From IMG/VR virus record IMGVR_UViG_3300017917_003143, positions 124,001 to 188,000 of that record: DNA of 64,000 nt; one strand, given 5' to 3'. Numbering within the stretch: position 1 is the first letter of the stretch; each line of letters opens with the position of its first letter. Of the stretch, positions 1,037 to 19,692 are shown in pieces. The position numbers and the translations under genes are program-made. The notes below the pieces were generated by a model. That model saw only the letters and a list, made by a program, of their open reading frames with translations, ran no database searches and was not told where the DNA came from.

Positions 1037-2248
1037 ATGAAAAAATTAGTGATCATCCCTGGTGGATTCCACCCCTATCATGCAGGGCACAAAGCACTGT
1101 ATGATGCCGCACGTGAAGCATTTCCGTCTGCTGATGTCTATGTGGCAGCCACAGATGATACCACAGGACGTCCGTTCCCATTTCGAACAAAGAAATTCTT
1201 GGCCCAGCAGGCAGGCATTCCGGGCAATAGATTTATCCAGGTAAAATCACCTTTCAGTGCTGAAGAAATCACACAGCATTTTGACCCTACGGAAACACAG
1301 TTGATTTTTGTGCGTTCAGAAAAAGATCGCGACCAGAATCCACAGCCTGGACAACCAGGACAGATCGTCACCCGTGGACCACGCAAGGGCATGGCTCCTT
1401 ATTTGCAGCCATACAAGCGCAACGGACTACAACCCATGAAAGATCATGCTTACATGACTTACTTGCCCACTGTGCAGTTTGGTCCTGGCATGACATCGGC
1501 CACAGAAATACGTGCCAAATGGCCTACCATGGATGCCAAACAAAAGGCCGCACTAGCTGGAGTTTTGTATCCTTTGGCTGCCGACAACGAAGCCAAGATA
1601 GCCAAGATAGTAGAAATACTGGACACAGTCATGGGCGGAACTCCAGAAAAAACAGTAGACGAAGCTGTGTTGGTAAATGATCCTGACGCAGGACACCAAA
1701 TCATACCTGATGGTGGCATGGGTACCTGGGACGAAGCTTCCATGGTTTCTAATCTTTCTCGCAAGTTCGCCGACATGGTCAACATGGTCAAGAACAAAAA
1801 CTACACCGGACTACAGTATGTACTGTACAAGGGCGGTGTGGTCAAGAGCTTGGTAGATGCCCTAGCTGAATACGAAGTGTTCATGCAAAAACAAGGCCGC
1901 AGACCCATAGCACGTGGTCGTGAAATAGACATGGGCAAAACTGGAGTGGCCGAGCGTGTGCGTATGCGCATGCCCGTGGACGAAGCTCCGGACTATATCG
2001 AAGAAGGTGATGTGGTCCAATTCCCTGGAGATCGTGCCGCACCACCCGATGTAGCTCAAGCACATCAGTTGGCTACCCAGATCATTGACATAGCCAAAGA
2101 CGAAAAGATCCAGGATCCTGGCCCAAGATTGGCACCGCTACGCCAACAGCTACAACGCCTGGGTTACAGACTGCGCTTGGACAATGGCGGTATGCGATTG
2201 ATCCATAATACTACAAATTGGAATACCATCGTTGACCCAATGAAATAA
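1037..2248 (+). CDS. HxGH (cytidylyltransferase-like) nucleotidyltransferase with modular C-terminal extension
   Basis: PGGFHPYHAGH and TSATEIR motifs; tail punctuated by VDE/VAE/IEE. Confidence 0.7.
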   Translation: MKKLVIIPGGFHPYHAGHKALYDAAREAFPSADVYVAATDDTTGRPFPFRTKKFLAQQAGIPGNRFIQVKSPFSAEEITQHFDPTETQLIFVRSEKDRDQNPQPGQPGQIVTRGPRKGMAPYLQPYKRNGLQPMKDHAYMTYLPTVQFGPGMTSATEIRAKWPTMDAKQKAALAGVLYPLAADNEAKIAKIVEILDTVMGGTPEKTVDEAVLVNDPDAGHQIIPDGGMGTWDEASMVSNLSRKFADMVNMVKNKNYTGLQYVLYKGGVVKSLVDALAEYEVFMQKQGRRPIARGREIDMGKTGVAERVRMRMPVDEAPDYIEEGDVVQFPGDRAAPPDVAQAHQLATQIIDIAKDEKIQDPGPRLAPLRQQLQRLGYRLRLDNGGMRLIHNTTNWNTIVDPMK

Positions 2249-2299: not shown

Positions 2300-3262
2300 A
2301 TGTCCGAACAACAAAACCCACAACAGCCTGAACAGGCCCAACAAGAGCAGGCTCAGCCTGGTCAACAACAAATCCAAGTCAATATCGACTATCTGCGCCA
2401 ACAGCGTGTGCATATCTGTATGCCTTGTTATGGTGGCATGCTCACTGAATCCACATTCATGAGCTATATCAAATGGTCAAACACTTGCCGACAATTGGGC
2501 CTGGATTGGACCATTGAAACCATGACCAACGAGTCATTGATTTCACGTGCGAGAAATACCTTGGTCGCTAAATTCCTCAATACACCAACATCCACGCACC
2601 TCATGTTCATCGACGCTGACATTGGCTGGGAACCCTGGCATCTCTTGGTCATGCTCAACGCAGACAAAGACGTCATTGGTGGCTTGTACCCAATGAAGAC
2701 CATGCCCGTTAAGTGGGTAGTAAATGGCTTTGAAGGTGCCAAAGAAGAAGGTCCTCTACAGGAAGTTTCCAAGACCGGCACAGGCTTTATGTTGATCAAG
2801 CGCCATGTGTTTGAGAAACTAGCCCGTCATCCTGCGGTAAAAACCTTTGCCAATGACATCGGCTTGCCAAGAGAACTTGATCCACACATGAAGACCTACT
2901 TCGACACAGCAGTACGTGAAAACCGCTACTACTCAGAAGACTGGACTTTCTGTGAAAACTGGCGCGACTTTGGTGGTGAAGTCTGGGTAGACAAGCGTGT
3001 GTTGCTCAAGCATACAGGAACCTATGTGTTTGATTATGCCGCACAGCCTGCCTTGTACGAAGCACTGAAACGCGAACACGATGCTGGACAAGCAGTGATC
3101 GCCGCACAGCAACAGTCTGAACAAGCACAGCAGGCCAATCAGCCCATGACCAGTGATTTTTCAAACTATGAAACAGTCAAGGTCGCGGCTCCACAACCTG
3201 CAGCCAAAGTGGTGGCTAAAACCAACCCTTCAACAAAAAAGGCTAAAGCAAAGTCTAAATAA
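2300..3262 (+). CDS. GT-A fold glycosyltransferase-like protein with Gln-rich termini
   Basis: HLMFIDADIGW (DxD), GTGFMLIKR, YSEDWTFC; SD GAGGA. Confidence 0.7.
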   Translation: MSEQQNPQQPEQAQQEQAQPGQQQIQVNIDYLRQQRVHICMPCYGGMLTESTFMSYIKWSNTCRQLGLDWTIETMTNESLISRARNTLVAKFLNTPTSTHLMFIDADIGWEPWHLLVMLNADKDVIGGLYPMKTMPVKWVVNGFEGAKEEGPLQEVSKTGTGFMLIKRHVFEKLARHPAVKTFANDIGLPRELDPHMKTYFDTAVRENRYYSEDWTFCENWRDFGGEVWVDKRVLLKHTGTYVFDYAAQPALYEALKREHDAGQAVIAAQQQSEQAQQANQPMTSDFSNYETVKVAAPQPAAKVVAKTNPSTKKAKAKSK

Positions 3263-3265
3263 ATA
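3256..3265 (+). promoter_or_regulatory. late-type promoter (overlapping TAAATA x2)
   Basis: 8 nt before ATG 3274. Confidence 0.55.
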
Positions 3266-3273
3266 GATGTACG

Positions 3274-6200
3274 ATGGACATCTATGAATTAGACAGCTAC
3301 CGCCTGTCAGACGCGGTAAAGTTTCACACTGAACTCAATCCTGCACTTTGGGACGGCAAAACCATGCGTCCCGAAGTGCGCGAGGCCCTGCTTAAAATCG
3401 CTGATGATTTTAAGACCTTCATGGGCATCGATGATCTTGCCATAGAAGACATCACTGTTTCAGGCTCCAACACCGCGTTCTCATACACACCACATTCAGA
3501 CATTGATCTACATTTACTGGTTGATTTCAGCAAGCTCAATCCCGACGAAGTTTACCAAGAGCTTTTCAATGCTAAAAAATATCAATACAACGATCAACAC
3601 GATATAAAAATCAGAGGCTATGACGTCGAGCTCTATGTTCAAGACTCGAACAAACCTGTGCGTAGCCTTGGCGAATACAGTATCATCAACAATGACTGGA
3701 CTCGTATTCCAGTACAGCGCCGAGGCAATCTCGACGAAAAATCTACACAATCAAAATATGAAAAATTAAAAGGTTTGATTGAGCTTGCTACCAACAGCGA
3801 TGATCTACAACAAGTCACAGCAGTCACAGACACACTGAAAAAATATCGCCAGGCTGGGTTGGATGAGCATGGTGAATTTGGCCCAGAGAATCTGGCTTAT
3901 AAGATATTGCGAACACAGGGCTATGTAGAAAGATTATTCAAGCACAAGGCCAATCTCGAAGATGCGAAATTGAGCTTGGCTGAACGCAAAAAGAAGAAAA
4001 CAAAATCTAAAAAGAAATTCCGTTATGGTGCCTTTGGCGGATATTATTATCCCGGATACGGTTATTACGGACAGACTGATGCCGTGGCTGACGGTGGTGG
4101 CGATGGCGGTGGTGAATCAGTAAAAGAATCCACAGTCAATGTTGAAAAGAAATCGATTCCATTGGACAAAGTCGTGCGTCGTTTTGTACACTTTGCTGCC
4201 AAGCATCTTAAATTAAAACAATTACCAAAGATTAAATTACGAAAAGGTGAGCTCAGCCACGACATACATTCCATGGGACACTATGTGGATGATAAAAAGA
4301 CCGTGGAAGTAGAAACCAAGGATCGCCATGTCATGGATATCCTGCGTACCCTGGCACACGAACTCACACACTATAGACAGCATGAACGCTTGGGCAAAGA
4401 CATGCCTGACACAGCAGGACGCACAGGCAGTCCCTATGAGAATGAAGCCAACACATTGGCTGGCATCATCATGCGTCATTTCCAGAACAAGTATCCAGAA
4501 TTCTTTGCCAGCACTGTGAGCGAAGATGGTGACAGCGTGGCCGCCCAATACGGAGATCAGACTCCACCTGGACCAGAGTCCAAACCTACCATGCCCAAGG
4601 GAACGGTGCGGGTTGATGTGTCAGACGTTTACGACTGGTATAAACTGGGACAAAATATCAGCAACCTCGATAGAGTGGATCCTAAAATTTTTGGTAAAGG
4701 ACCACCCAGCACTATCGTCAGTTTTGGTGATGAAGAAACTGAACACAAGTACATCGACCATTTAAAAAAATTAGGGTTGACGACCACTGATATCGATCCT
4801 GTTGATCCCAATCAACCTCCTGGTATGCCGCGTCAAAAAGTTGATCCTACCTACAATGTAGACGAAACCATTGATGCTCCTGTGAGCAAAGATGCCAAGG
4901 CCAACCTTGACTACTACAAATTTATCCGTGGCAAACAGCAGTTGGGTCGCCCGCTGACCAAATCAGAAATGCAGTTCCTTAGCAAGTATCAACTCGCACA
5001 GCATCTTAAGAAACAAGTTGGTGAACAAGAACTCGAAGAAGGGATAGGTCGGGCATTGGGCACAGCCGCTGTGGCCGGTGCCATGGCCCTGGGGTCACCT
5101 GCTGCCAAAGCACAAAGCCCACTGCAAACAGCACACAACATTGGCAGTATAATTTACAACAAGAACATCACCCGAGCTGGCGCTGAAGAAGAGATCAAAG
5201 GCATGGCCAGAGATTTGGCACGTGGCGATCAAGAAATACGTGTGGGTGGCAAACGCATCTGGGGAGGCCCTCAAGCACAGGGTGAGCGAGTGGCAGCCAA
5301 TGGTGTAGGTGCCACTCCCGAAGCCGCATTCCAAGATGCGCTGAACAGAGCCTACACAGATGCCAATCGTCGTTACGGTCCTATCTCTGTAGGAGACTGG
5401 CGACCCATTGACCGAGAAAAAGAATTAGAACAAGTGGGTGGACAATATCGTGCGGCTGTGGTCATACAAGGTCCAGCACCTGTAAAAGAAGATGCGTCAG
5501 GTTATATTCCTACAAAAAAGCAGGCCAAGGATCCACGATTTAAAACAGCACTCACAGTGGATATCAAGCCTGGACAGTTAGGCAAAGAAGCCAACAAGCT
5601 GGGATTACAAACAGACAGCCAAGGTCGTCCTGATCTCTTGATGAAAAACTTGGCCAATGCGTTGAAAGAATACAAAGAGACCGGAGTGTTTGAAGCTGTC
5701 AAACCTGTTGCTCCTGTCATACCATCACGAGCACCCAAGACAGAATACCCACCCATGGTCAAGCAAAAGACCAGTCTACCTCAAGATAAACCGACACCGC
5801 GTCCAGACGGCACAGGTCGTATCATCAACTATGAAATACGAGAAGAAGAAGACTTGTTAGAAGTCAAAATGTCACCATCTTCTCTGGAAGCCTGGGCTCG
5901 TAGTCCCGAAGCTGAAGGCATACGTGCTGGATTTGAAGCCGAAATGATCTTCCGTGACACCAAGCGTGAAGACGATGAAGAGGAAATGGAGCCCGACTAC
6001 GACTATGACGAGCGTCCGGATGACATTGATCATGTCGTAGACTTCTTCTCTAATGACGATTATGGTTATGGCTTGAGCTCACGTGGTGCTAGAAGCCTGC
6101 GCGAAGATCTATTCAACGAATTTATTGAATGGGCTGATGAACAAATAGCAGAATCATGGGACAACAATGCTGAGGACCAAGTCAAGGACTACATGGAAAA

Positions 6201-8301
6201 CAACGTCTGGGGCGATGACGAAGAACGTGAAAAACGCATCGCTGACAAAATAGACGAACTGTTTCCTGACGAAGATCCAGAACCAATATTGGCAGCTGGC
6301 GCAGGTGCTCCAAGATTTACCCGTAGTTCAGACCAAACAGCATATACACAAGAAAACGATTTATATGCCAAATACCGAGAAGCTTCAGATGCGGCCTATG
6401 AAGAGTTTGAAGCTGAAGCCGAGAGCGAATACGAAAACCAAGGGCACTACTACGACGAAGCTCGCGACTACTACTTTGAAATGATGCGAGAAGGCGGCGA
6501 CTACGATGAACGAGAGTTCTTGCGTGACAAGTATGGTTACATGAGCGAGATCGCCAGCAGTTTCACTCTTGATTGGCCTTATTGGACCGGGGGTGGTAAT
6601 TCAGGCTACGGCAGTAGAGATTGGGAAGATATCGCCACCAGCTTAGAACGTGCTGTGAGAATGGATGTCAAAGTAGGATCAGGCTATCACTCTGTGACCC
6701 GCCGAGACGATCGTTATATCATAGAACCTGACGGATCGTTAGACCCTGATGACTACGAGGATGCCGGTCTTGAAATCGTAAGTCCGCCAATGCCATTGCC
6801 CACGGCCTTGGACCAGTTGCAGAAAGTCATAGAGTGGGGCAACAATACAGCCGACGCCTATACCAATGATTCAACAGGTCTTCACATGGGCGTGAGCATA
6901 CCTTATGTGGGCGGTGATGTTGACTATGTCAAGCTGGTGTTGTTCATGGGCGACGAATATGTGCTAGAAAAATTTGGCCGTGCGTCAAACACCTACACAG
7001 CATCGGCCATGCAGAAGCTACGTCAAAACATGGCAGGTGCCAGAAACCGTGGCGAACTCACAGAAGCCAAGTTAGACCCCTTGGGTGCATTAGAGTTAGT
7101 ACAAAAGAATCTCATTGAGCTGGCCGCAAGATATGTGCAGAATGGTGTAGGTAATTCAAAATACACTTCAGCCCACATCAAAGATGGCTACATCGAGTTC
7201 CGTAGCCCCGGTGGAGACTACTTGGCCATGGAGAGCCGTGGCGAGTTTGATGACATCAAGAACACCATGTTGCGTTTTGCTCGTGCCATGCAGATCGCTG
7301 GCAACCCTGCTCTTGAGCGCAAAGAGTATGCCAAGAAACTCTACAAATTGATCTCACCAGGCGCACAAGACGATGGGTTAAAACTGTTTTCCCAATACGC
7401 CGCAGGTACTATCAGCCCTGAACAGCTCAAGAAGCAGTGGGCCGACGCTGTGCTACAGAAAGAGCTACCCACCACAGGCAAAGAAGAATACGAAGTCTAT
7501 AGCATGGATAAAAAGAATAGCCCCGACGGCATCATTGATACATTCTATGCCAGAGACTACGACAGTGCCTATGACCAGTACAGGAAGAAATACAGCAATG
7601 ATCCACGCTGGAACCAACTTGATGTGCGTTTAAAGATGCCTTGGTTTGATGTGTATGGACCCGACGGTGAGGAAGTCGCGACCATAAGATCTCGAGATAT
7701 CAATCAAGCCAAAGAAAAGGCCATGAACCAGTTTGAATACTGGTCAGACGATTGGAAAATATATCGCAGGCCCGATAACACACCCGAACCAAAGTTAAGT
7801 GTACGAGCTCAAGTGGCCAAGCGTATCAAAGAGCCTAAAGTAAGCCCAGCACAGGCCGCAGACAATGCCCGGGATTCCCAACAGCTACAAGCTCGCATAG
7901 GAGAACCACGACCCGCTGGTGCTGTGGGCGACACTGGCTACTATCGCGTGACTTGGGATGAACGCAGGGACGGTGAGATACGCAGTGATGCACTGAACAT
8001 AGATGCACCCAACGCCACAGCGGCCATGGATCGTGTGCGTGATGCACTGCAACTGCAAGGTCGAGATATCGTACAGATATCAGCTGATGCACAACAACCT
8101 CCAGCTTGGCGAGATCAATTGGCCCAACAAGTTCGTACAGCATCACCTCGCGCCAACTATGAATTGTATCAATACGATGATCCAACACGAGTAATAGGCG
8201 TGATGCATCATGCCACAGCTGATGAAGTACGTGCATACATTGATCAACAAGAACAAGAAGGCATGCCTCCAGGATTTTTACGAGTAAGACAGGTATCATG
8301 A
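3274..8301 (+). CDS. 1675 aa polyvalent protein: Pol-beta-type nucleotidyltransferase + HExxH zincin + amidoligase-like domain + repeats
   Basis: GS..SDIDLH (DID at 3499-3507); AHELTH (4357-4371); GFEAE/DGSL/GLEIVSPP/STGLHMGVS/IEFR. Confidence 0.75.
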   Translation: MDIYELDSYRLSDAVKFHTELNPALWDGKTMRPEVREALLKIADDFKTFMGIDDLAIEDITVSGSNTAFSYTPHSDIDLHLLVDFSKLNPDEVYQELFNAKKYQYNDQHDIKIRGYDVELYVQDSNKPVRSLGEYSIINNDWTRIPVQRRGNLDEKSTQSKYEKLKGLIELATNSDDLQQVTAVTDTLKKYRQAGLDEHGEFGPENLAYKILRTQGYVERLFKHKANLEDAKLSLAERKKKKTKSKKKFRYGAFGGYYYPGYGYYGQTDAVADGGGDGGGESVKESTVNVEKKSIPLDKVVRRFVHFAAKHLKLKQLPKIKLRKGELSHDIHSMGHYVDDKKTVEVETKDRHVMDILRTLAHELTHYRQHERLGKDMPDTAGRTGSPYENEANTLAGIIMRHFQNKYPEFFASTVSEDGDSVAAQYGDQTPPGPESKPTMPKGTVRVDVSDVYDWYKLGQNISNLDRVDPKIFGKGPPSTIVSFGDEETEHKYIDHLKKLGLTTTDIDPVDPNQPPGMPRQKVDPTYNVDETIDAPVSKDAKANLDYYKFIRGKQQLGRPLTKSEMQFLSKYQLAQHLKKQVGEQELEEGIGRALGTAAVAGAMALGSPAAKAQSPLQTAHNIGSIIYNKNITRAGAEEEIKGMARDLARGDQEIRVGGKRIWGGPQAQGERVAANGVGATPEAAFQDALNRAYTDANRRYGPISVGDWRPIDREKELEQVGGQYRAAVVIQGPAPVKEDASGYIPTKKQAKDPRFKTALTVDIKPGQLGKEANKLGLQTDSQGRPDLLMKNLANALKEYKETGVFEAVKPVAPVIPSRAPKTEYPPMVKQKTSLPQDKPTPRPDGTGRIINYEIREEEDLLEVKMSPSSLEAWARSPEAEGIRAGFEAEMIFRDTKREDDEEEMEPDYDYDERPDDIDHVVDFFSNDDYGYGLSSRGARSLREDLFNEFIEWADEQIAESWDNNAEDQVKDYMENNVWGDDEEREKRIADKIDELFPDEDPEPILAAGAGAPRFTRSSDQTAYTQENDLYAKYREASDAAYEEFEAEAESEYENQGHYYDEARDYYFEMMREGGDYDEREFLRDKYGYMSEIASSFTLDWPYWTGGGNSGYGSRDWEDIATSLERAVRMDVKVGSGYHSVTRRDDRYIIEPDGSLDPDDYEDAGLEIVSPPMPLPTALDQLQKVIEWGNNTADAYTNDSTGLHMGVSIPYVGGDVDYVKLVLFMGDEYVLEKFGRASNTYTASAMQKLRQNMAGARNRGELTEAKLDPLGALELVQKNLIELAARYVQNGVGNSKYTSAHIKDGYIEFRSPGGDYLAMESRGEFDDIKNTMLRFARAMQIAGNPALERKEYAKKLYKLISPGAQDDGLKLFSQYAAGTISPEQLKKQWADAVLQKELPTTGKEEYEVYSMDKKNSPDGIIDTFYARDYDSAYDQYRKKYSNDPRWNQLDVRLKMPWFDVYGPDGEEVATIRSRDINQAKEKAMNQFEYWSDDWKIYRRPDNTPEPKLSVRAQVAKRIKEPKVSPAQAADNARDSQQLQARIGEPRPAGAVGDTGYYRVTWDERRDGEIRSDALNIDAPNATAAMDRVRDALQLQGRDIVQISADAQQPPAWRDQLAQQVRTASPRANYELYQYDDPTRVIGVMHHATADEVRAYIDQQEQEGMPPGFLRVRQVS

Positions 8302-9074
8302 GAGCATCTGAATTTTCAAACTCCAAGCTGGTGATCTTTGACATTGATGATACCTTGGTCAACACAGATACACGGGTAAATGTCGTGCGAGATGGCGAAG
8401 TGATCAAGCAACTCAACAGCCACGATTTTACACACTATAAATTAGGCCCTGGTGAAGAGTTTGACTTTGGTGCGTTCAAAGACGCCAGAGAATTCTTTAC
8501 CAAGGCCAAGCCAATACCTGGTATGATTCGACAACTAAAGCATGACATCGACACAGGAAATAAAGTTATCATGCTCACTGCCCGTAGTGATTTCAATGAC
8601 CGAGACATATTCTTAGATACTTTCCGACGCTTTGGTATAGAAATGGATCGTGTGCATGTGTATCGTGCCGGCAACTTGACCATCAAAGCTGCCACAGAAG
8701 AAAAGAAAAAGATCATGTTGCGTCATTTGTTGGGCAAGACGCACTATGACAAAATTATAATGTATGATGACAGTGTGCCTAATTTAAATGCATTTATAAG
8801 TCTTAAACAAGAATACCCTTGGAGCAAATTTTATGCTTGGCATGTGGATCCCAATGGGCAAGCCAGTGAATACCACAGAACAGATATGGAAGAAAACTTT
8901 CACGATGGCCGAGTAAAAGGCAAAAGTCGCCCAGGACGTGTCAAACGTGCAGGTGCCAGCTGTGCAGGAAGTGTCACGGACCTACGAGCAAAAGCCCGTA
9001 AATATGGCGGCGAGCGAGGCAAGATGTATCACTGGTGTGCCAACATGAAGAGTGGTCGCAAAAAGAATAAGTAA
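8298..9074 (+). CDS. HAD-superfamily phosphatase (PNK-phosphatase-like) plus basic Cys-containing tail
   Basis: LVIFDIDDTLV, MLTAR, MYDD motifs. Confidence 0.75.
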   Translation: MRASEFSNSKLVIFDIDDTLVNTDTRVNVVRDGEVIKQLNSHDFTHYKLGPGEEFDFGAFKDAREFFTKAKPIPGMIRQLKHDIDTGNKVIMLTARSDFNDRDIFLDTFRRFGIEMDRVHVYRAGNLTIKAATEEKKKIMLRHLLGKTHYDKIIMYDDSVPNLNAFISLKQEYPWSKFYAWHVDPNGQASEYHRTDMEENFHDGRVKGKSRPGRVKRAGASCAGSVTDLRAKARKYGGERGKMYHWCANMKSGRKKNK

Positions 9075-9080
9075 TACATT

Positions 9081-9263
9081 ATGCGAGCACAAGAACTCAC
9101 TGGACACAAATGGATCTCCAAGATCACCATCAAGAACCCTAACTACACAGGCAGGGTTGAAGTGTCGGTGTATGCTCACAATCAAAGTGAAGCACGACAA
9201 CTGTTAAAAGCACAGTACGGCATAGAAGATCATCACATTGGCGCCATCAGGAGAGCTCAATGA
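9081..9263 (+). CDS. small MRAxE-type protein
   Basis: 60 aa, starts MRAQEL. Confidence 0.7.
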   Translation: MRAQELTGHKWISKITIKNPNYTGRVEVSVYAHNQSEARQLLKAQYGIEDHHIGAIRRAQ

Positions 9264-9577
9264 GAGCCACTGAATTTGTCGCTGAAGATCTCAATGCCGG
9301 TGGATTCCGTATCCGTGTGAGTCCGCACTTGGAAAACCGCGCAGAGAAGCGTGGCATATCCATGCCCGTGATTGTAGGCATACTCAATAGGCTGGATCGT
9401 GCCCGTAGACATATCAAAGAGTTGGATCCTAACACACAATTTAATATTTTTGATAGCCATCACAACATACACCTTGGCATGATGCGTTCAGCATTTGATC
9501 CCAACAAACTGTTGTTGAACACAGTGTATCAAAATGAAAACTATCACGGGCGTAATCCTGTGTTGAAGGTACGGTAA
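9260..9577 (+). CDS. MRAxE-type protein, possible DUF4258/BECR-like nuclease
   Basis: VSPHLENRAEKRGIS resembles H-x3-R-x3-R-x-I motif. Confidence 0.4.
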   Translation: MRATEFVAEDLNAGGFRIRVSPHLENRAEKRGISMPVIVGILNRLDRARRHIKELDPNTQFNIFDSHHNIHLGMMRSAFDPNKLLLNTVYQNENYHGRNPVLKVR

Positions 9578-14493: not shown

Positions 14494-15348
14494 ATGGCTG
14501 ATTTACGCAAGATCCTTGAATCCTTCTCCCGTATAGAACAAGAAAGCCTCAGCTCTCAGCAAAAGAGCGTGAAGCAACTGCCTGCCCTGTTCAAGCCACA
14601 AAAAACATCTCCACAGTTATCAGGCCCATATCCTGGCAAGAATGCCACCTTGGGTTATCTAGTGGGCGAAGGTGATGAGCAAGGTTATGGCAGTGAAGTT
14701 GGGGATACTGGCGCAGATGAAACACCAGATGGCGTAGATCCAGACACCAAATCATTCCTTGAAGGTAGATTAACAAATCCAGGTGAGCAAGACACTCCTG
14801 TGGCACAGGCTATAATACGTCGCATACTCACACAGAGACTTGACCTATTGTCTAAATACGGCCCTGAGTTGGTTGGCAGTGCTGTTGACGATGTCGCTGA
14901 CTGGGTTGGTGATGTAGAAGAAATAGGTACCAGTGATGTCAGTGGGTGGGTCAATCAAGTTGAACGCATGCTCAAAGAAAATCCACCTGAAGCGTTTGGT
15001 CTGTCAGAAGCACAAGCCACCGAAGACGTCATCTCTACAGTAAAGAAAAAGCTGGGCGACTATCTGTCCGACTTATCAAAAGAAATCAAATCAGACTCTG
15101 ACTTAAAAGACAAAATTCCGCAGGATGTAGATAAAATTTCTCCTGCTGTAAAGACCATTACAACTGATGATGGTAAAGAAATCAAGATACACGGCAACGA
15201 AGATGATGGTTTCCGTATCACCATACGAAATAAACCACACTCGGCAACTTTTGAAAGCCTGGACCATGCTGTCATGGCCTGTGAGATGTATTTGAATCGC
15301 CGCAGAATGCGCATGCCACACAACGAAGATTACTTGGAAGAACAATAA
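14494..15348 (+). CDS. modular hypothetical protein
   Basis: 284 aa; segments bounded by VGE/FLE/LSE/LEE. Confidence 0.7.
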   Translation: MADLRKILESFSRIEQESLSSQQKSVKQLPALFKPQKTSPQLSGPYPGKNATLGYLVGEGDEQGYGSEVGDTGADETPDGVDPDTKSFLEGRLTNPGEQDTPVAQAIIRRILTQRLDLLSKYGPELVGSAVDDVADWVGDVEEIGTSDVSGWVNQVERMLKENPPEAFGLSEAQATEDVISTVKKKLGDYLSDLSKEIKSDSDLKDKIPQDVDKISPAVKTITTDDGKEIKIHGNEDDGFRITIRNKPHSATFESLDHAVMACEMYLNRRRMRMPHNEDYLEEQ

Positions 15349-18300
15349 TGAATTTACTGAACTTGATCGAAGACACTACCACAGGTTACGATAACTTACG
15401 AGCCTTGATGCAAGCCTCGCAATCAGGGCAGGATGCTGTGCTTACAGTGGGTGGCGAAACTGTTACCTTGGATCCAATGGAAACACGTTGGATGTTTGGC
15501 AAATACAAAGCGTTCAACAAAGCCGGCCGCCAAGAAGAATTCTTGAATCACTTGGCTGATCCTGTGAAATTTGATCAGCACATGAAACAACTGCGCCAAC
15601 TCATTGACAAACAAAAGAACTTCCGTGGCTCAGTGCCCGGTGAGCGTGGTGTGGAAGAAAACATAGTGGCCGGCATCGTTGGCCATGAGATTAAAAAATT
15701 CCTTGACGAGCCTACCCCCAACAATAATGTAGCAGAAGAAGAAGCAGTAGAAGAAATTGCCATGAACAATCCCGATCAACCCACTGCGCAAACAGCAGGT
15801 AAGATCAACTGGGAACGCATGATCAAAGATTACATGGACAATAAACCCTACAGTGAATTTGAATTCCCTAGTGATCGTCCACTCACACTTTATCGTTCGC
15901 AAGTCTATGCCATACTCAAAGACTTTGGACGCATGAAGCCGCAACAAAAAGTCAACTTGATTCTTAATACCTTTGGTGACAAGTATGCCATGGTTGATTA
16001 CATCGACAAACTGCGTAGCAAAGGCATGATGCCCAAGAAAGTTCCTGCGTACAAAGCTCCCGGTGTTGAAGCGCCAGCTCCTGGTCAGATGACGTTGCCT
16101 GGTATGGATGTTCCCAAGATCAAAGAAGCCCAGGCTCAAAAAAAAAATTCTGACAAAGCAGGTTTAGACCGCGATACCGCGATAAACCCCAGAGTAGCTC
16201 GTGCTCTACAGTTGGCCCGAGCTCGACAGAGCGCAGCCGGCAGTGACATTGAAGCCTTTGTACAAGACGAACTAGAAAAAGCTCAGTCTGCACAGGCGCA
16301 GATCGATCAACTTGAAAAAGACAATCAACAACAGGCTGATCAGATATCACGCTTGTCGTCACAGCTATCTCAGCAAGATCAGGAAATACAACAGATCAAG
16401 AGCCAGCCAGAGCCAGAACCTCAATCACCTGCTCCAGCAGTGCAACCGGCACCTACACCAGCACCTGCTGAGCCTGATGCCAAGGCTCAACCAGCTCCTA
16501 AATCCACCGAGCCTGCCAAGACTGAACCCACAGCAGAACCACAACCCGTGCCTGTGCCACAACGGCAACCTGCGCCCAAGGCCAAGAAAACACCCAAAAA
16601 ACGTACCACTCGTAAAAAGGCTCCAGCAACTACGCCTGACAATGTCATACCATTTCCAGGCAAGAAAAAAACACCCGCAGATGATGAATTGTCAGCGGCC
16701 TTGCAAGGTGTTGACATGGATTCCGACGATCTGTTTGCCCGAGCAGTGGGTATGAACGAAGACACTGGCGATCTGAATGTTGGCGATCCTGTGATCATCC
16801 GTGGCAACGTAGAGTTTGAAGGCAAGACCGGCGATGTCGCAGGTTTTGGACGAGACAAACACTTTGTCATAGTGGATCTGTATAACTTTGGCAAACATGC
16901 GTTCCATGCTTCCAATGTCAAGTACAACGAATATGCTGATCAAGAAGTAGACGAAGGACGTTTAAAAAACGATGAACTCGAGCGCCAGTGGCAAGCTGGA
17001 CAACAGGCCACACGCAGTTTCCAGAATCGCGAACGCACTGCTGGTGAAGAAGAACCAGTAGGTGACTTCCGTGTGGTACGCCGCAAAGATGGTGTAGTAG
17101 GCGATCTCAAACAGCACTACAGTTCCAACGAAGCATTCCGTCATGCACGAGCACTCAAGAAAAAATATCCCAGCATGGAAGTAGGTGTGAAGTGGCCTAC
17201 AGGACAAATCAACTGGGTAGGACTGACCTTTGAGGACGATGTCACAGAGATGCAGACCAAGCTGGACAGATACAATGTCAATCAGCCTCCTCCGGGCGGT
17301 ACCAACAAGCAACGTGAACAGTTTTTAGATGCTCGAGACAAGTTGTTCCGATTGATGAAAAATGCTTCTACAGCAGACAAAGAAGTTATCAGACTCAAGA
17401 TAGCAGATCTAGAAGCCAAGGCACAGGCCAAAGGTATCAAGATACGAGAAGCTGGAGAGTTTAATCGTAGTGGATACAATGCCATCAAAGATGTCAGCGA
17501 CTGGCGTGAAAAAATCCGTGTGATGCAAGAGCTTATGAAGGATCGTGCTCTTATGAGCGATCCCGAAGCCAAAGCGGCCATTGAACAACGCATTGGAGAT
17601 CTGATCCGTGTGGGCCAAGAACAAGGCTATGTCACAGAAGCTCTCAGCGATAAAGCTATGTCTGTATTACGTGGACTCAAGAGCCAACCACAAGCCACCC
17701 AACCTGCCGCAATGGATCCTGCTAAACAAGCAGAGGTTGATGCTTGGGCACGAGATGTTGAGCGCAATCTTGCTCCTAAACTAAAACCACAAGCAGTCGC
17801 AAAGCCTGCGATTGACCTCAATGTTCCTCAACCAAAAAACATTGAAGATACGTTGCCTGATGATTTGCCAACCTTGCAACGTCGCATCAAGCAGTTGGAC
17901 GAGTTGATCAAAATGAAAGAGATGATCGACAAGTTATTCTTGAAAGCACAGAATGTGCGTGGTGGCATCTATCCAGGCTTGCAAAGTGACATCGAAGACG
18001 AAGAGATGTACGGTGTTCCAACCAATGATCAAGACTTTGAGGAATTGAAAAACAAGTACACACGAGACTTGGCAGCACTGCAAAAGTTTTTGGCCATGAA
18101 GAAGGCTGTGTATCGTGAAGATGAAGAACTCGTCGGCGAAAGCGCCGCTCTTGTAAGACTACAACGAGCACGTCAGCAGTTGGCACAGCAAGGCGTGGCA
18201 GAAGCACAAACAGATTATCAAAAGCGTAGACAGCGTGAGCGTGATGTAGACGCAGGTAAGCCTGTGAGCCGTCAACCCAAGAATCCACAGAATGACTATT

Positions 18301-18653
18301 TTGCTCGCCGCAAAAAAGAAAAAAAGCATGACATGGAAGAGCAGAAAGACAAAGCCGGCAATCCAATGTATCGCCGTGAAGAAGTCTACATGGTAGTACA
18401 CAATGGCAAGGAAGTAGCATTCTACAAACCCGAAAGCATGGCACGAGCCTACAGCGATGCCGAAGATCTCGTCAAGCGTTTTGGTGGCGAAGCTCATGTA
18501 AAGAAAGTCATGCGCGAAGCAAAAAAGAAAGATCGCAGTCCAGGTAAGATAACCAAGAGCGAAGATCCTTGCTGGTCAGGTTATCACATGGTAGGCAAGA
18601 AAATAAAGAACGGTCGTGAAGTTCCTAACTGCGTACCGGGTAAGAAAGGTTAA
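15348..18653 (+). CDS. 1101 aa modular protein: coiled coil, Pro/Ala/Gln-rich linker, KOW/SH3-like module, basic C-terminal modules
   Basis: ORF track; VGDPVII..G..G.V pattern; PAP-rich tract about 16390-16630. Confidence 0.75.
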   Translation: MNLLNLIEDTTTGYDNLRALMQASQSGQDAVLTVGGETVTLDPMETRWMFGKYKAFNKAGRQEEFLNHLADPVKFDQHMKQLRQLIDKQKNFRGSVPGERGVEENIVAGIVGHEIKKFLDEPTPNNNVAEEEAVEEIAMNNPDQPTAQTAGKINWERMIKDYMDNKPYSEFEFPSDRPLTLYRSQVYAILKDFGRMKPQQKVNLILNTFGDKYAMVDYIDKLRSKGMMPKKVPAYKAPGVEAPAPGQMTLPGMDVPKIKEAQAQKKNSDKAGLDRDTAINPRVARALQLARARQSAAGSDIEAFVQDELEKAQSAQAQIDQLEKDNQQQADQISRLSSQLSQQDQEIQQIKSQPEPEPQSPAPAVQPAPTPAPAEPDAKAQPAPKSTEPAKTEPTAEPQPVPVPQRQPAPKAKKTPKKRTTRKKAPATTPDNVIPFPGKKKTPADDELSAALQGVDMDSDDLFARAVGMNEDTGDLNVGDPVIIRGNVEFEGKTGDVAGFGRDKHFVIVDLYNFGKHAFHASNVKYNEYADQEVDEGRLKNDELERQWQAGQQATRSFQNRERTAGEEEPVGDFRVVRRKDGVVGDLKQHYSSNEAFRHARALKKKYPSMEVGVKWPTGQINWVGLTFEDDVTEMQTKLDRYNVNQPPPGGTNKQREQFLDARDKLFRLMKNASTADKEVIRLKIADLEAKAQAKGIKIREAGEFNRSGYNAIKDVSDWREKIRVMQELMKDRALMSDPEAKAAIEQRIGDLIRVGQEQGYVTEALSDKAMSVLRGLKSQPQATQPAAMDPAKQAEVDAWARDVERNLAPKLKPQAVAKPAIDLNVPQPKNIEDTLPDDLPTLQRRIKQLDELIKMKEMIDKLFLKAQNVRGGIYPGLQSDIEDEEMYGVPTNDQDFEELKNKYTRDLAALQKFLAMKKAVYREDEELVGESAALVRLQRARQQLAQQGVAEAQTDYQKRRQRERDVDAGKPVSRQPKNPQNDYFARRKKEKKHDMEEQKDKAGNPMYRREEVYMVVHNGKEVAFYKPESMARAYSDAEDLVKRFGGEAHVKKVMREAKKKDRSPGKITKSEDPCWSGYHMVGKKIKNGREVPNCVPGKKG

Positions 18654-18757: not shown

Positions 18758-19165
18758 ATGAGAAACTATATCAATTTGATGGAAGCTCTGGAAAAAGGTT
18801 GTCCACCAGCAACACAGAGCATCAAACTCAATCTTGAAAATCGCCAAAAGGCCATAGATGAGTATGGCCACGGTCCATTGAATCCCAATGAGCCCAATGA
18901 AGAGTTTTGGCAAGCCAAGGCTGACGAGTGGAACATATCTAATCCTGAAGATGCTAAATCAGCACGTTGCGGAAACTGTGCGGCGTTTGACATGAGTGAT
19001 GACATGATGGACTGTATCGCTAAAGGCATTGGTGCAGAACCTGGAAGTGATCCTCATGACACCATTGATGCTGGACATTTAGGTTATTGTAAGTTTCTCA
19101 AGTTTAAGTGTGCGGCCAAACGTACCTGCGATGCTTGGGTAGAAGGCGGACCTGTAACAAAATGA
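18758..19165 (+). CDS. Cys-rich protein, HiPIP-like Fe-S motif
   Basis: CGNCAAF...GYC...CDAW. Confidence 0.5.
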   Translation: MRNYINLMEALEKGCPPATQSIKLNLENRQKAIDEYGHGPLNPNEPNEEFWQAKADEWNISNPEDAKSARCGNCAAFDMSDDMMDCIAKGIGAEPGSDPHDTIDAGHLGYCKFLKFKCAAKRTCDAWVEGGPVTK

Positions 19166-19692
19166 GAGCTCAAGAATTTGTCAGCGAAAAGTGGAGCGAG
19201 AAATACAAACGCTCTATCAACTGTGCCAATCCCAAAGGATTCAGTCAACGAGCCCACTGTCAAGGTCGCAAAAAGAATGAAGATTTAAATGAATTCGCTC
19301 CAAGTGACAGCGGCGATGGTGATGACGGATTCAGTGATGACATGTTAAAACATCTTGCCGCACAGTGGTGGCACGGTGATGAAGACCCTAGAGTAGAACA
19401 AATACTGGCTGCGGCTGGTTGGGAAATAGGTCAAGACGAAGGCTACGACAATGGCGGAGTGTTTGTTGTACGAGCAGGAGATGTCAATGGCAACAGTTTT
19501 ATAAGTTGGCCAGCAGAAGAACTTGAAGTTGATCTGGAAGAACAGTTGACTTTCAAGGGCTCTCCTTGTACAGTAGATTGTTCAGGGCACAGAGCAGGTT
19601 ATGATTGGAGCCGCCGCAAAGGCATGCGTGTTCCAAATTCTTGGAGCCAGAGTTTCAACAACGGCGCCGCACTACACAGAGCAGGCAAATGA
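19162..19692 (+). CDS. MRAxE-type modular protein (MRAQEFVSE)
   Basis: start moved to ATG 19162; three modules split at NE/EE. Confidence 0.7.
   Translation: MRAQEFVSEKWSEKYKRSINCANPKGFSQRAHCQGRKKNEDLNEFAPSDSGDGDDGFSDDMLKHLAAQWWHGDEDPRVEQILAAAGWEIGQDEGYDNGGVFVVRAGDVNGNSFISWPAEELEVDLEEQLTFKGSPCTVDCSGHRAGYDWSRRKGMRVPNSWSQSFNNGAALHRAGK

What the first reader, a model, noticed from the sequence alone, without database searches (positions are those of the whole stretch)
3274..8301. 1675-aa polyvalent protein apparently built as a protease-cut polyprotein
Seen: consecutive modules are a Pol-beta-type NTase (DID 3499), a Tyr/Gly-rich linker, a zincin HExxH (4357), low-complexity blocks, an amidoligase-like domain (about 5900-7300) and C-terminal repeats. 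Apparent module borders fall at hydrophobic-x-Glu sites: SLAE, SVKE, TVSE, NVDE, ELEE, PVKE, GVFE, DLLE, ELTE. Known: T4 gp21 and phiKZ gp175 cleave after x-x-E; phage polyvalent proteins combine zincins and other conflict domains. Inference: one gene yields several injected effectors. The NTase + peptidase + amidoligase combination suggests a host-modifying kit.
Basis: partly seen in the sequence, partly recalled or inferred. Interest (0 to 1): 0.8.

Follow-up and report, generated by a model that had tools for sequence, protein, structure and literature searches.

The report
Jumbo-phage polyprotein with protease-site junctions
A giant phage encodes one 1675-residue protein made of several enzymes and small modules, and every joint between modules carries the cut-site motif of the phage's own T4-type head protease, so it is very probably chopped into separate proteins, one of which would then start with an export signal.

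Summary
The ORF (window 3274-8301, +, 1675 aa) is real. It belongs to a family of over 1,200 proteins of 1,300-2,600 aa, many on 320-350 kb phage contigs. The "acidic low-complexity" part is a confidently predicted helical insert, and the C-terminal "repeats" are not significant by sequence.

The cut-site idea gains strong comparative support. In this protein alone, [LIVM]-x-E is not enriched overall (29 sites against 25 expected). Across 119 homologues the middle modules are shuffled, yet every junction keeps E at P1 and L/V/I at P3 with a variable P2: 77/77, 82/82, 18/18 and 83/84 distinct contexts. Sec- or lipoprotein-type signal peptides start directly after such a Glu in 56 of 60 contexts.

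The genome encodes a T4 gp21 orthologue. Seven other proteins carry T4-CTS-like leaders ending in [VIL]-x-E.

Seven of the nine proposed sites are supported, and ELTE is rejected. Cleavage itself, packaging and injection remain inferred. Self-cleavage by the embedded zincin is the main rival.

The parts
3274..8301 (+). Whole ORF, 1675 aa plus stop: the polyprotein
   Evidence: More than 1,270 homologues, many on 320-350 kb contigs.
3274..3288 (+). N-terminal M-D-I-Y-E5 | L. An I/L-x-E motif with variable P2, and a possible short propeptide.
   Evidence: The pattern M-[ND]-[IL]-x-E-L holds in about 97% of homologues with 10 or more different P2 residues. Stand-alone NTase homologues lack it. 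It resembles the T4 Alt N-terminus MELITE|LF. This is a weak lead only.
3274..3984 (+). Module 1: Pol-beta-type nucleotidyltransferase with a helical C-terminal half (aa 1-237), ending in S-L-A-E237
   Evidence: G64-S65, D76-x-D78 and D117/E119 are invariant or nearly so. PHROG 36119 matches at E 1e-41. The fold resembles AadA/ANT/MNT (Foldseek prob 0.94; VIA Z 6-7). It occurs as a stand-alone protein of about 240-265 aa in cyanophages, Maribacter phages and Lak phages.
3985..4128 (+). Module 2: a 48-aa peptide (aa 238-285) with a Lys-rich start, a Tyr/Gly-rich middle and an acidic Gly-rich end, finishing in S-V-K-E285
   Evidence: pLDDT is below 50 over aa 246-284, yet the stretch is conserved (occupancy 0.9, identity 0.5-0.6). 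The VKE motif is kept in 92% of homologues.
4129..4524 (+). Module 3: minimal gluzincin metallopeptidase (aa 286-417) with H362-E-x-x-H366 and E389, ending in T-V-S-E417
   Evidence: H362, E363, H366 and E389 are invariant in 69 sequences. The fold matches the minigluzincins 4jiu/4jix (prob 1.0, Z 7.2, model residues 291-398). Profile matches are weak: M78, DUF6782 and MPTase-PolyVal. In 83 of 84 distinct contexts the domain end has [LIVMF]xE within 4-19 aa.
4525..4866 (+). Module 4 ('M428', aa 418-531): small alpha/beta domain of unknown function, ending in N-V-D-E531
   Evidence: pLDDT is 60-76 over aa 438-529. The module lies before the zincin, after it, or after C740 in different homologues. 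Its end, DPTYNV[DN]E, is kept in all contexts.
4867..5040 (+). Module 5 ('M533', aa 532-589): two predicted helices, ending in E-L-E-E589
5041..5112 (+). Sec-type signal-peptide-like segment G590-IGRALGTAAVAGAMALGSPAAKA613 | Q614, starting directly after E589
   Evidence: Direct reading shows an n-region with Arg, a 14-aa h-region, and A-K-A at positions -3 to -1. In homologues the segment always follows [LVMI]-x-E (18 of 18 contexts). Lipobox-like versions occur in other subfamilies. Overall, 56 of 60 distinct hydrophobic stretches lie 9 aa or less after xxE, against a background of 0.16.
5113..5490 (+). Module 6: small alpha/beta domain behind the signal peptide (aa 614-739), ending in P-V-K-E739
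   Evidence: pLDDT is 80-89 over aa 670-733. The best structural match is the secreted protein HP1454 (Z 6.9, rmsd 2.3, model residues 669-733). That match is weak.
5491..5694 (+). Module 7 ('C740', aa 740-807): the most conserved stretch of the protein, (D)ASGYIPTKKQAKDPRF...TVDIKPG, followed by helix-loop-helix
   Evidence: Identity is 82% over aa 751-775. It is preceded by E at P1 in 82 of 82 distinct contexts, with P3 being V in 38, L in 28, I in 3, Q in 8, T in 4 and A in 1. A SAP/Rho_N-like helix-extended-helix motif is only a lead (atlas score below 0.7).
5695..5862 (+). Pro-rich disordered linker (aa 808-863) with twin sites I-R-E857 and L-L-E863
   Evidence: pLDDT is below 50. Just before V-K-M-S-P, P1 is E in 77 of 77 distinct contexts, with P3 being L in 75 and I in 2.
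5863..7473 (+). Module 8: carboxylate-amine ligase (Amidoligase_2, glutamine-synthetase fold; aa 864-1400) with a helical acidic insert (aa 936-1100)
   Evidence: Pfam PF12224 scores 24.3 bits against a cut-off of 22. AFDB 'Amidoligase enzyme' matches at E 4.7e-5. The ten best of 48,161 PDB chains are all glutamine synthetases (Z 8.0-9.9), followed by Dop at 7.6 and PafA at 7.2. Many Glu, His and Arg columns are invariant. It is a stand-alone 523-aa protein in Ralstonia phage RsoM2USA.
7474..8298 (+). C-terminal region (aa 1401-1675): several small predicted beta-beta-alpha units and a conserved helix (RAQVAKRI). No well-conserved [LIV]xE junctions.
   Evidence: The content varies between homologues.

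Best explanation
The gene encodes a polyprotein of a clade of T4-related jumbo phages.

Its cassettes, in order, are:
- an AadA/MNT-like nucleotidyltransferase
- a basic Tyr/Gly peptide
- a minigluzincin peptidase
- two small unknown modules
- a signal peptide followed by a small alpha/beta domain
- a very conserved peptide with a helix-loop-helix
- a glutamine-synthetase-fold amidoligase with small C-terminal domains

The cassettes are joined by short exposed linkers. Each linker carries [Leu/Val/Ile]-x-Glu.

Proposed mechanism: the phage's own T4 gp21-type prohead protease cuts after these Glu residues, at E237, E285, E417, E531, E589, E739 and E863, and possibly at E5, E807 and E857. This would release about eight products. 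One product then begins exactly with a Sec-type signal peptide (a lipoprotein-type one in other subfamilies), so cleavage would unmask its export.

What is shown:
- the modules, their shuffling and the junction motif
- the position of the signal peptides directly after the motif
- the presence of the protease and of T4-CTS-like leaders in the genome

What is inferred:
- that cleavage happens
- that gp21 is the enzyme (my estimate about 0.55)
- that it happens inside the prohead, so that the pieces travel with the DNA into the next cell as T4 Alt and the internal proteins do (about 0.35)

The alternative is late cytoplasmic cleavage by the same protease.
For: (1) Modularity. In 119 homologues the frame NTase - YG - zincin ... 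amidoligase is constant. C740, M428, M533 and the signal-peptide domain are permuted, lost, or joined by inserts of up to about 900 aa. M428 lies before the zincin in P0033 and P0042. Stand-alone NTase proteins end at ...LSL, exactly where the polyprotein has SLAE|R.

(2) Junction motif over distinct sequence contexts.
- Amidoligase start: 77/77 have E at P1, with P3 being L in 75 and I in 2.
- C740 start: 82/82 have E, with P3 being V/L/I in 69.
- Signal-peptide start: 18/18.
- NTase end: 17/17 have S-L-x-E.
- Zincin end: 83/84.
- P2 and P4-P6 vary, and the upstream modules differ.

(3) Hydrophobic stretches were found without reference to the motif. Of 60 distinct ones, 56 lie 9 aa or less after [LIVMF]xE, against a background of 0.16. 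None of the predicted new N-termini is a Met, so internal initiation cannot make these pieces.

(4) In this protein the sites fall in or beside pLDDT<50 segments.

(5) Protease. Peptidase_S77 matches at E 1e-27. The protein is 34% identical to T4 gp21, and its DHP and GVSSRG motifs align with NHP and GVSSRG of T4 gp21. The major capsid protein has YLKE|NASAG near the position of the T4 gp23 site FLTE|AEIGG.

(6) Seven of 380 predicted proteins start with MRAxEF[VI]xE or MKTxxEY[IL]TE, like the T4 capsid targeting sequence MKTYQEFIAE. None of 2,122 internal Met positions does. Several of these proteins lie just downstream of this gene, and the same holds next to homologue P0056.

(7) Literature. 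gp21 cuts after I/L-x-E and more weakly after other xxE (PMC12991175). Residues 8 and 10 of the targeting sequence govern processing, and Asp at position 10 blocks it (PMC9026906).

(8) A TAAATA late-promoter-like motif, enriched about 10-fold upstream of genes including the large structural genes, lies 8-12 nt before the ATG.
Against: - There are no protein data. No cultured relative carries the polyprotein, so no virion proteome can be consulted.
- The N-terminus (MDIYELDSY) is not the MRAxEF-type leader. It only loosely resembles the T4 Alt N-terminus.
- The gene lies about 155 kb from the head-gene cluster. T4 alt also lies outside that cluster.
- Val is as common as Leu at P3, and Gln or Thr occur in some junctions. 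That is looser than the I/L-x-E reported for T4.
- Conserved [LIV]xE also occurs inside the amidoligase core (IIE1151, LIE1282), so conservation alone does not mark a site.
- Homologues are related, so the context counts are not independent trials.
- The embedded zincin is invariant at its catalytic residues and could be the processing enzyme.
- The signal peptides were judged by eye and by simple patterns, not with SignalP or LipoP.
Confidence: 0.5

Rival explanations
1. The polyprotein is cut by its own minigluzincin domain, in cis or in trans, in the cytoplasm or after delivery. This is what Iyer et al. proposed for the MPTase domain of polyvalent proteins. The prohead protease plays no part.
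For: The HExxH...E residues are invariant in all 69 aligned homologues, and every full-length homologue among the 119 examined has the zincin. There is a weak profile match to MPTase-PolyVal PF18818 (E 0.033). The autoprocessing concept is in PMC5512222.
Against: The conserved determinants are P1 Glu and P3 Leu/Val/Ile, with variable P1' (R, S, D, T, G, D, V). That is the signature of gp21-type serine proteases. From general knowledge, thermolysin-like gluzincins usually read a hydrophobic P1'. The same [VIL]-x-E ends the CTS-like leaders of proteins that have no zincin. The specificity of minigluzincins is unknown, so this rival is not excluded.
Confidence: 0.2
2. The protein is not cleaved and works as one multidomain chain. 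The [LIV]xE motifs are linker or domain-capping features. The hydrophobic segment is an internal membrane anchor.
For: There is no overall excess of the motif in this protein. Some conserved copies lie inside folded domains. Large uncleaved multidomain phage proteins exist: N4 vRNAP-type polyvalent proteins are packaged whole (PMC5512222).
Against: An internal signal anchor would place the downstream ~1,060 aa outside the cytoplasm, including an ATP-dependent ligase (inference from the order of the modules). Lipobox- and AxA-type signals make sense mainly at a free N-terminus. A motif that stays at every junction while modules are reshuffled and P2 drifts is hard to explain by folding alone.
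Confidence: 0.15
3. The gp21-type protease does cut it, but in the cytoplasm late in infection and without packaging. The pieces act in the producing cell, for example an exported lipoprotein and metabolic enzymes.
For: T4 gp21 cleaves a cytosolic host protein during infection and when it is expressed alone (PMC12991175). The polyprotein lacks the MRAxEF-type leader. The gene lies among non-structural genes such as DNA polymerase and a HAD phosphatase.
Against: Neighbouring genes carry CTS-like leaders. There is an Alt-like short N-terminal I-x-E. Nothing decisive separates this rival from the packaged version.
Confidence: 0.2

Closest known systems
T4 internal head proteins and Alt, which are substrates of the gp21 prohead protease
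   Same: The phage is T4-type, with a gp21 orthologue, a gp23-type capsid protein and CTS-like leaders. The cut motif is hydrophobic-x-Glu. Enzymes are made as precursors, as Alt is. The short N-terminal I-x-E resembles MELITE|L of Alt (PMC9026906).
   Different: In T4 each packaged protein is a separate gene and loses only terminal propeptides. Here about eight unrelated modules sit in one chain with internal sites at every junction, one module carries a signal peptide, and packaging is unproven.
Polyvalent proteins of phages and conjugative elements (Iyer et al. 2017, PMC5512222)
   Same: Many conflict-type catalytic domains sit in one polypeptide (Pol-beta NTase and zincin peptidase). Domain composition varies between relatives. 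Processing into separate units is predicted.
   Different: The hallmark MPTase-PolyVal profile is matched only weakly (E 0.033, below threshold). In the passages of that paper that I read, ligases appear only as RNA ligases, and signal-peptide-bearing modules are not mentioned. The predicted processing enzyme is the prohead protease, not the embedded zincin. The junction motif has not been described for that class.
phiKZ / 201phi2-1 / SPN3US head and ejection proteins cut by gp175- or gp245-type proteases
   Same: Several cuts are made after Glu in head proteins of jumbo phages, with redundant sites in propeptides. One processed ejection protein (SPN3US gp47) has a predicted transmembrane helix (PMC5694885).
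   Different: Those proteases read S/A/G-x-E or A-x-E and mostly remove propeptides. Here P3 is L/V/I, as for T4, and the cuts would separate functional modules.
Pup ligase PafA and depupylase Dop (glutamine-synthetase-fold ligases acting on a C-terminal Glu)
   Same: The amidoligase has the same superfamily fold (Z 7.2-7.6). Every predicted cleavage product would end in a C-terminal Glu.
   Different: Glutamine synthetases score higher (Z 8-9.9). There is no Pup-like sequence and no evidence of protein conjugation. This is a resemblance only.

Membership tests
Substrates of T4 gp21-type (Peptidase_S77) prohead protease | The same genome encodes an S77 protease with catalytic His and Ser | tested here: met
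   PF03420 matches at E 1.2e-27, above the cut-off. The protein is 34% identical to T4 gp21, and its DHP and GVSSRG motifs align with NHP and GVSSRG of T4 gp21. The assignment of these motifs to the catalytic His and Ser rests on my own knowledge.
Substrates of T4 gp21-type (Peptidase_S77) prohead protease | Accessible I/L-x-E sites (Glu at P1, aliphatic residue at P3) | tested here: met
   Junction logos. The sites lie in or beside pLDDT<50 segments. Val is frequent at P3, which is looser than in T4.
Substrates of T4 gp21-type (Peptidase_S77) prohead protease | N-terminal capsid targeting sequence, or another route into the prohead | tested here: inconclusive
   The N-terminus MDIYE|LDSY is not the MRAxEF[VI]xE leader found on seven other proteins. 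It only loosely resembles the T4 Alt N-terminus.
Substrates of T4 gp21-type (Peptidase_S77) prohead protease | Cleaved fragments present in proheads or virions | not testable with these tools
   No cultured phage carries the polyprotein. The RsoM2USA proteome covers only ten bands.
Polyvalent proteins (Iyer et al. 2017) | 2-15 domains in one polypeptide of a phage or plasmid, among them conflict-type catalytic domains, with variable architecture | tested here: met
   The definition is taken from PMC5512222.
Polyvalent proteins (Iyer et al. 2017) | Zincin-like MPTase of the PolyVal type (PF18818) | tested here: inconclusive
   E 0.033 and 14.7 bits against a cut-off of 27.5. M78 and DUF6782 score slightly better. 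The fold matches minigluzincins best.
Polyvalent proteins (Iyer et al. 2017) | Delivered with the DNA (late or virion gene context, or proteomic evidence) | tested here: inconclusive
   A late-promoter-like TAAATA lies 8-12 nt upstream, and CTS-like neighbours are present. The gene is not in the structural cluster, and there are no protein data.
Amidoligase_2 / glutamine-synthetase-fold carboxylate-amine ligases | Profile match above threshold, and the GS-type fold | tested here: met
   PF12224 scores 24.3 bits against 22. The top ten PDB matches are all GS (Z 8-9.9). AFDB 'Amidoligase enzyme' matches at E 4.7e-5.
Amidoligase_2 / glutamine-synthetase-fold carboxylate-amine ligases | Metal- and ATP-binding Glu, His and Arg residues in place | tested here: inconclusive
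   Columns E888, E890, H1139, E1151, E1167, H1204, E1282, E1308 and R1310 are invariant in 75 sequences. They were not mapped residue by residue onto a solved GS.
Pol-beta superfamily nucleotidyltransferases (ANT/AadA/MNT type) | The G-S ... D-x-D motif plus a third acidic residue on the NTase fold | tested here: met
   G64, D76, D78 and E119 are invariant, and S65 and D117 nearly so. The fold matches AadA, AAD(9), MNT and TUTases. The Pfam NTP_transf_2 match is not significant (E 0.1).
Minigluzincins (proabylysin / projannalysin type) | A catalytic domain of about 100 aa with HExxH and a downstream Glu ligand | tested here: met
   H362, E363, H366 and E389 are invariant. Foldseek prob 1.0, TM 0.59 by target; Z 7.2 over model residues 291-398. 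Peptidase activity was not tested.
Sec / lipoprotein signal peptides | n-h-c organisation with AxA or a lipobox, located at a free N-terminus | tested here: inconclusive
   The n-h-c pattern with A-K-A|Q is read directly here. Lipobox-like L-S-G-C, L-T-G-C and T-P-G-C occur in homologues. No SignalP or LipoP was available. The N-terminus would be free only after the proposed cut.

The most novel reading that the evidence does not exclude
Head-protease cleavage is used as a switch that unmasks signal peptides. The polyprotein, and small neighbours whose CTS-like leader is directly followed by a hydrophobic segment, would be packaged and cut after [LIV]-x-E in the prohead. On injection, one fragment would present a free Sec or lipoprotein signal to the new host's export machinery. 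A ready-made envelope protein would then be installed within seconds of infection, while the NTase, zincin and amidoligase act in the cytoplasm. A further step the data do not exclude: every fragment ends in a C-terminal Glu and the chain carries a GS/PafA-fold ligase, so the fragments could be ligated to amines or lysines in a Pup-like way.
Probability: 0.12. Interest if true: 0.9.

Novelty: new variant of a known kind. Interest (0 to 1): 0.68.

Why it matters
If this is true, tailed phages use a true polyprotein strategy. One gene would hold about eight cassettes, with a uniform protease site at every joint and free shuffling of cassettes, a way of building proteins best known from RNA viruses. 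It would extend the role of the T4-type prohead protease from trimming propeptides to releasing whole enzymes and an exported protein.

It would also give a simple sequence rule for finding cargo proteins in uncultured jumbo phages: [L/V/I]-x-E at module joints, and MRAxEF[VI]xE leaders. More than a thousand family members exist in metagenomes, so this is a widespread and unstudied piece of jumbo-phage biology.

Signal peptides and lipoboxes placed directly behind cleavage sites are, as far as I know, undescribed. They can be tested with ordinary co-expression and reporter assays.

Tried and rejected
- Nucleotide search of the phage collection found nothing.
- Protein-level search found only the NTase and amidoligase modules as separate genes in cultured phages. 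No cultured carrier exists, so no virion proteome is available.
- Sequence searches of the PDB with three modules found nothing.
- The canonical T4 late promoter TATAAATA is absent from the window. The shorter TAAATA core is the motif actually enriched upstream of genes. The copy before this gene overlaps the upstream stop codon and leaves almost no leader, so I treat it as weak evidence.
- The RsoM2USA virion proteome covers only ten abundant bands and says nothing about its amidoligase homologue.
- PA5oct, a relative with MS-annotated virion proteins, has no MRAxEF leaders. The single pattern hit lies inside a gene. The leader-as-CTS idea could therefore not be checked there.
- ESM Atlas look-ups for C740 and for the exported domain gave only low scores, below 0.7.
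- The 'C-terminal repeats' failed a shuffling test.
- ELTE1264 was rejected as a border. It lies in a loop inside the amidoligase that 70% of homologues lack.
- phiKZ gp175 was rejected as the relevant protease, because the genome's enzyme is gp21-type.
- Internal translation starts were rejected as the way to make the pieces, because none of the predicted new N-termini is a Met.
Full report
**1. The object**

Window 3274-8301 (+) is a single ORF of 1675 codons plus stop. The window is part of a 343,632-bp single-contig virus record.

That genome encodes three T4-type head proteins:
- a T4-type prohead protease (Peptidase_S77, E 1e-27)
- a 362-aa ORF between the protease and capsid genes, which is scaffold-like by its position only
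- a gp23-type major capsid protein (E 3e-100)

The capsid protein is 67% identical to those of Vibrio phage 2.275.O, Sinorhizobium phage Phosso and Pseudomonas phage PA5oct. The phage is therefore a T4-related jumbo phage.

The protease is 34% identical to T4 gp21, and its DHP and GVSSRG motifs align with NHP and GVSSRG of T4 gp21. The capsid protein has YLKE|NASAG, and PA5oct has FLVE|NASAG, close to the position of the T4 gp23 site FLTE|AEIGG.

**2. The modules**

A search of 5.8 billion proteins returned more than 1,270 relatives of 1,300-2,600 aa, many on contigs of 320-350 kb. I worked with the best 119. Two AlphaFold models built on these alignments, together with profile and fold searches, give the following parse.

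| aa | Module | Evidence |
|---|---|---|
| 1-237 | Pol-beta nucleotidyltransferase with a helical second half | G-S...D-x-D plus a third acidic residue conserved. Fold like AadA/ANT/MNT. PHROG 36119 at E 1e-41. |
| 238-285 | Disordered but conserved peptide: Lys-rich, then Tyr/Gly-rich, then acidic | |
| 286-417 | Minimal gluzincin | HExxH plus E389 invariant. Best fold matches proabylysin and projannalysin. Weak profile matches to M78, DUF6782 and MPTase-PolyVal. |
| 418-531 and 532-589 | Two small modules of unknown function | |
| 590-613 | Signal-peptide-like segment | direct reading; |
| 614-739 | Confident small alpha/beta domain | |
| 740-807 | The best-conserved stretch of the protein: ASGYIPTKKQAKDPRF...TVDIKPG, then helix-loop-helix | |
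| 808-863 | Pro-rich linker | |
| 864-1400 | Glutamine-synthetase-fold amidoligase | Pfam above threshold. The ten best of 48,161 PDB chains are all GS, Z 8-9.9. AFDB 'Amidoligase enzyme' at E 4.7e-5. |
| 1401-1675 | Small beta-beta-alpha units | |

The 'acidic low-complexity' insert of the amidoligase is predicted as long helices with pLDDT above 90. The C-terminal units are not significantly alike in sequence.

**3. Is the xxE pattern more than chance?**

In this one protein, no. [LIVM]xE occurs 29 times against 25.3 expected. There is a modest excess in or next to low-confidence segments: 14 of 29 against 8.5 expected, p=0.025. The same test with D, K or Q in place of E shows no excess.

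The family gives a much stronger answer. The middle cassettes are shuffled:
- In this protein the order is zincin - M428 - M533 - signal domain - C740.
- Most distant relatives have zincin - (signal domain) - C740 - M428 - M533.
- Two have M428 before the zincin.
- Some carry inserts of up to about 900 aa.

Whatever the neighbours are, the junction keeps Glu at P1 and an aliphatic residue at P3, while P2 and P4-P6 drift.

| Junction | Distinct contexts with the motif | P3 residues |
|---|---|---|
| Before V-K-M-S-P of the amidoligase | 77/77 | L in 75, I in 2 |
| Before ASGYIPT | 82/82 | V in 38, L in 28, I in 3, Q in 8, T in 4, A in 1 |
| Before the signal peptide | 18/18 | L in 11, V in 4, M in 2, I in 1 |
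| End of the NTase (S-L-x-E) | 17/17 | L in 17 |
| End of the zincin | 83/84 | L in 37, V in 35, I in 9, M in 2 |

Further points:
- M428 ends in DPTYNV[DN]E in every context.
- Stand-alone NTase proteins of a cyanophage and a Maribacter phage stop exactly at ...LSL, where the polyprotein continues with AE|RKKK.
- GVFE807 is conserved only in the close subfamily.
- ELTE1264 lies in an optional loop inside the amidoligase.

**4. An independent line: internal signal peptides**

I scanned all 119 homologues for uncharged hydrophobic stretches without looking at the motif. Of 60 distinct stretches, 56 begin 9 aa or less after [LIVMF]xE. The chance rate is 0.16. The four exceptions lie inside the amidoligase core or in an aberrant sequence.

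In this protein the segment reads E589 | GIGRALGTAAVAGAMALGSPAAKA | QS. That is an n-region with Arg, a 14-residue h-region, and A-x-A before the predicted cut.

In other subfamilies it reads, for example:
- VEE | GWKEKAAGLAAAACIAGTPGC | ATT
- LDE | SLKTSAGTVAVLTCLLAGGSLSGC | AS
- VEE | GIKQQAAATALAACLAAGGTLTGC | AT

These are lipobox-like.

Such signals make sense at a free N-terminus. If the segment were an uncleaved internal anchor, everything downstream, including an ATP-dependent ligase, would lie outside the cytoplasm. None of the predicted new N-termini is a Met, so internal translation starts cannot produce these pieces. This is the strongest argument that the chain is cut at these positions.

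**5. Which protease?**

The determinants are P1 Glu and P3 Leu/Val/Ile, with no constraint at P1'. These are the determinants reported for T4 gp21: I/L-x-E, and more weakly other xxE (PMC12991175). Residues 8 and 10 of the T4 capsid targeting sequence govern processing, and Asp at position 10 blocks it (PMC9026906).

The same genome gives a second read-out of its protease's taste. Seven of 380 predicted proteins begin with MRATEFVAE, MRAQEFVSE, MRAREFVTE, MRAREFITE, MKTFAEYLTE, MKTLREYITE or MRASEF. These are close to the T4 targeting sequence MKTYQEFIAE. None of 2,122 internal Met positions has this pattern.

Several of these genes lie directly downstream of the polyprotein (window 8298, 9260 and 19162). 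The same leaders (MRASEFIVE, MRAQEFIVE, MRANEFTTE, MRAEEFITE) follow the homologue P0056 on an unrelated contig.

The embedded zincin is the obvious alternative. Iyer et al. proposed exactly this role for the MPTase of polyvalent proteins (PMC5512222). I cannot exclude it, because nothing is known about minigluzincin specificity. The shared motif on proteins that lack a zincin favours gp21.

**6. Packaged and injected?**

In favour:
- CTS-bearing neighbours are present.
- A TAAATA late-promoter-like element lies 8-12 nt before the ATG. This core is enriched about 10-fold upstream of genes, including the large structural genes at 279-321 kb.
- The conserved N-terminus M-[ND]-[IL]-x-E|L has a freely varying P2. 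It resembles the N-terminus of T4 Alt, MELITE|LF. Alt is T4's large packaged enzyme, and its gene also lies outside the head cluster.

Against:
- The N-terminus is not the MRAxEF leader.
- The gene sits among replication and metabolism genes.
- T4 gp21 is now known to cut a cytosolic host protein (PMC12991175). Late cytoplasmic processing is therefore possible.

**7. Function of the pieces**

All three enzymes keep their catalytic residues in every homologue examined, so they are probably active. Their substrates are unknown. I found no evidence that they work on a common substrate. 'Host-modifying kit' remains a guess.

C740 may contain a SAP/Rho_N-like helix-extended-helix, which is a low-score lead only. 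The exported domain weakly resembles a secreted Helicobacter protein (Z 6.9).

**8. Comparison and novelty**

The protein works like a cross between two known things: T4's protease-processed internal proteins, and the polyvalent proteins of Iyer et al.

Features I did not find described in the papers I read:
- a uniform [L/V/I]-x-E joint at every cassette border
- free permutation of cassettes around a fixed frame
- signal peptides or lipoboxes directly behind the joints
- a GS-fold amidoligase as cargo

I rate it a new variant of a known kind. Everything beyond sequence and predicted structure is still inference.

Noticed in passing
window 8298-9074, 9260-9577, 19162-19692; genome C1:320444-324464: A family of T4-CTS-like N-terminal leaders (MRAxEF[VI]xE, MKTxxEY[IL]TE) occurs on 7 of 380 predicted proteins, against 0 of 2,122 internal Met positions. 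They cluster just downstream of the polyprotein and next to the structural genes. The same leaders follow the homologue on contig L006. They are probably packaged internal proteins. One carrier is a HAD/PNK-like phosphatase whose start overlaps the polyprotein's stop.
   Followed up: partly
genome-wide; for example window 3255-3265, and genome 282348 and 292884 upstream regions: The TAAATA core (NTAAATA) is enriched about 10-fold in the 60 nt upstream of genes. The full T4 late promoter TATAAATA is not. There are two spacing classes: 15-29 nt before the ATG with a Shine-Dalgarno sequence, and 5-9 nt before the ATG without one. The second class suggests leaderless or near-leaderless late mRNAs.
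   Followed up: partly
L006:18499-18690 and genome C1:51586-51864 (-): Small proteins have a short leader ending in xxE (MRFKEFME|, MDFFKLVAE|) that is directly followed by a hydrophobic, signal-like segment. This is the same 'cut site then signal' arrangement seen inside the polyprotein.
   Followed up: no
window 15348-18653 (+) and 14494-15348 (+): A 1101-aa ORF and a 284-aa ORF have no Pfam match. Their N-termini carry an early L-x-E (MNLLNLIE|D, MADLRKILE|S). They may be further protease substrates.
   Followed up: no
genome C1:246741-261476 (-): A single ORF of 4,911 aa lies upstream of the structural region. It was not examined.
   Followed up: no
window 1037-2248 (+) and 2300-3262 (+): Two conserved upstream neighbours of the polyprotein are syntenic with L006. 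One is a cytidylyltransferase-like protein (it starts MKKLVIIPGGFHPYHAGHK, and the L006 orthologue has a weak CTP_transf_like hit). The other is a PHROG 1574 protein with a faint glycosyltransferase-like (Anp1) match.
   Followed up: no
L006:3276-6401: The related jumbo-phage contig encodes DnaJ- and ClpB-like chaperones a few kb upstream of its polyprotein.
   Followed up: no
window 5491-5694: The C740 peptide is the most conserved part of the whole protein (82% identity over aa 751-775 across 119 homologues). It is nevertheless predicted with low confidence and matches no profile. A conserved binding partner is likely.
   Followed up: partly
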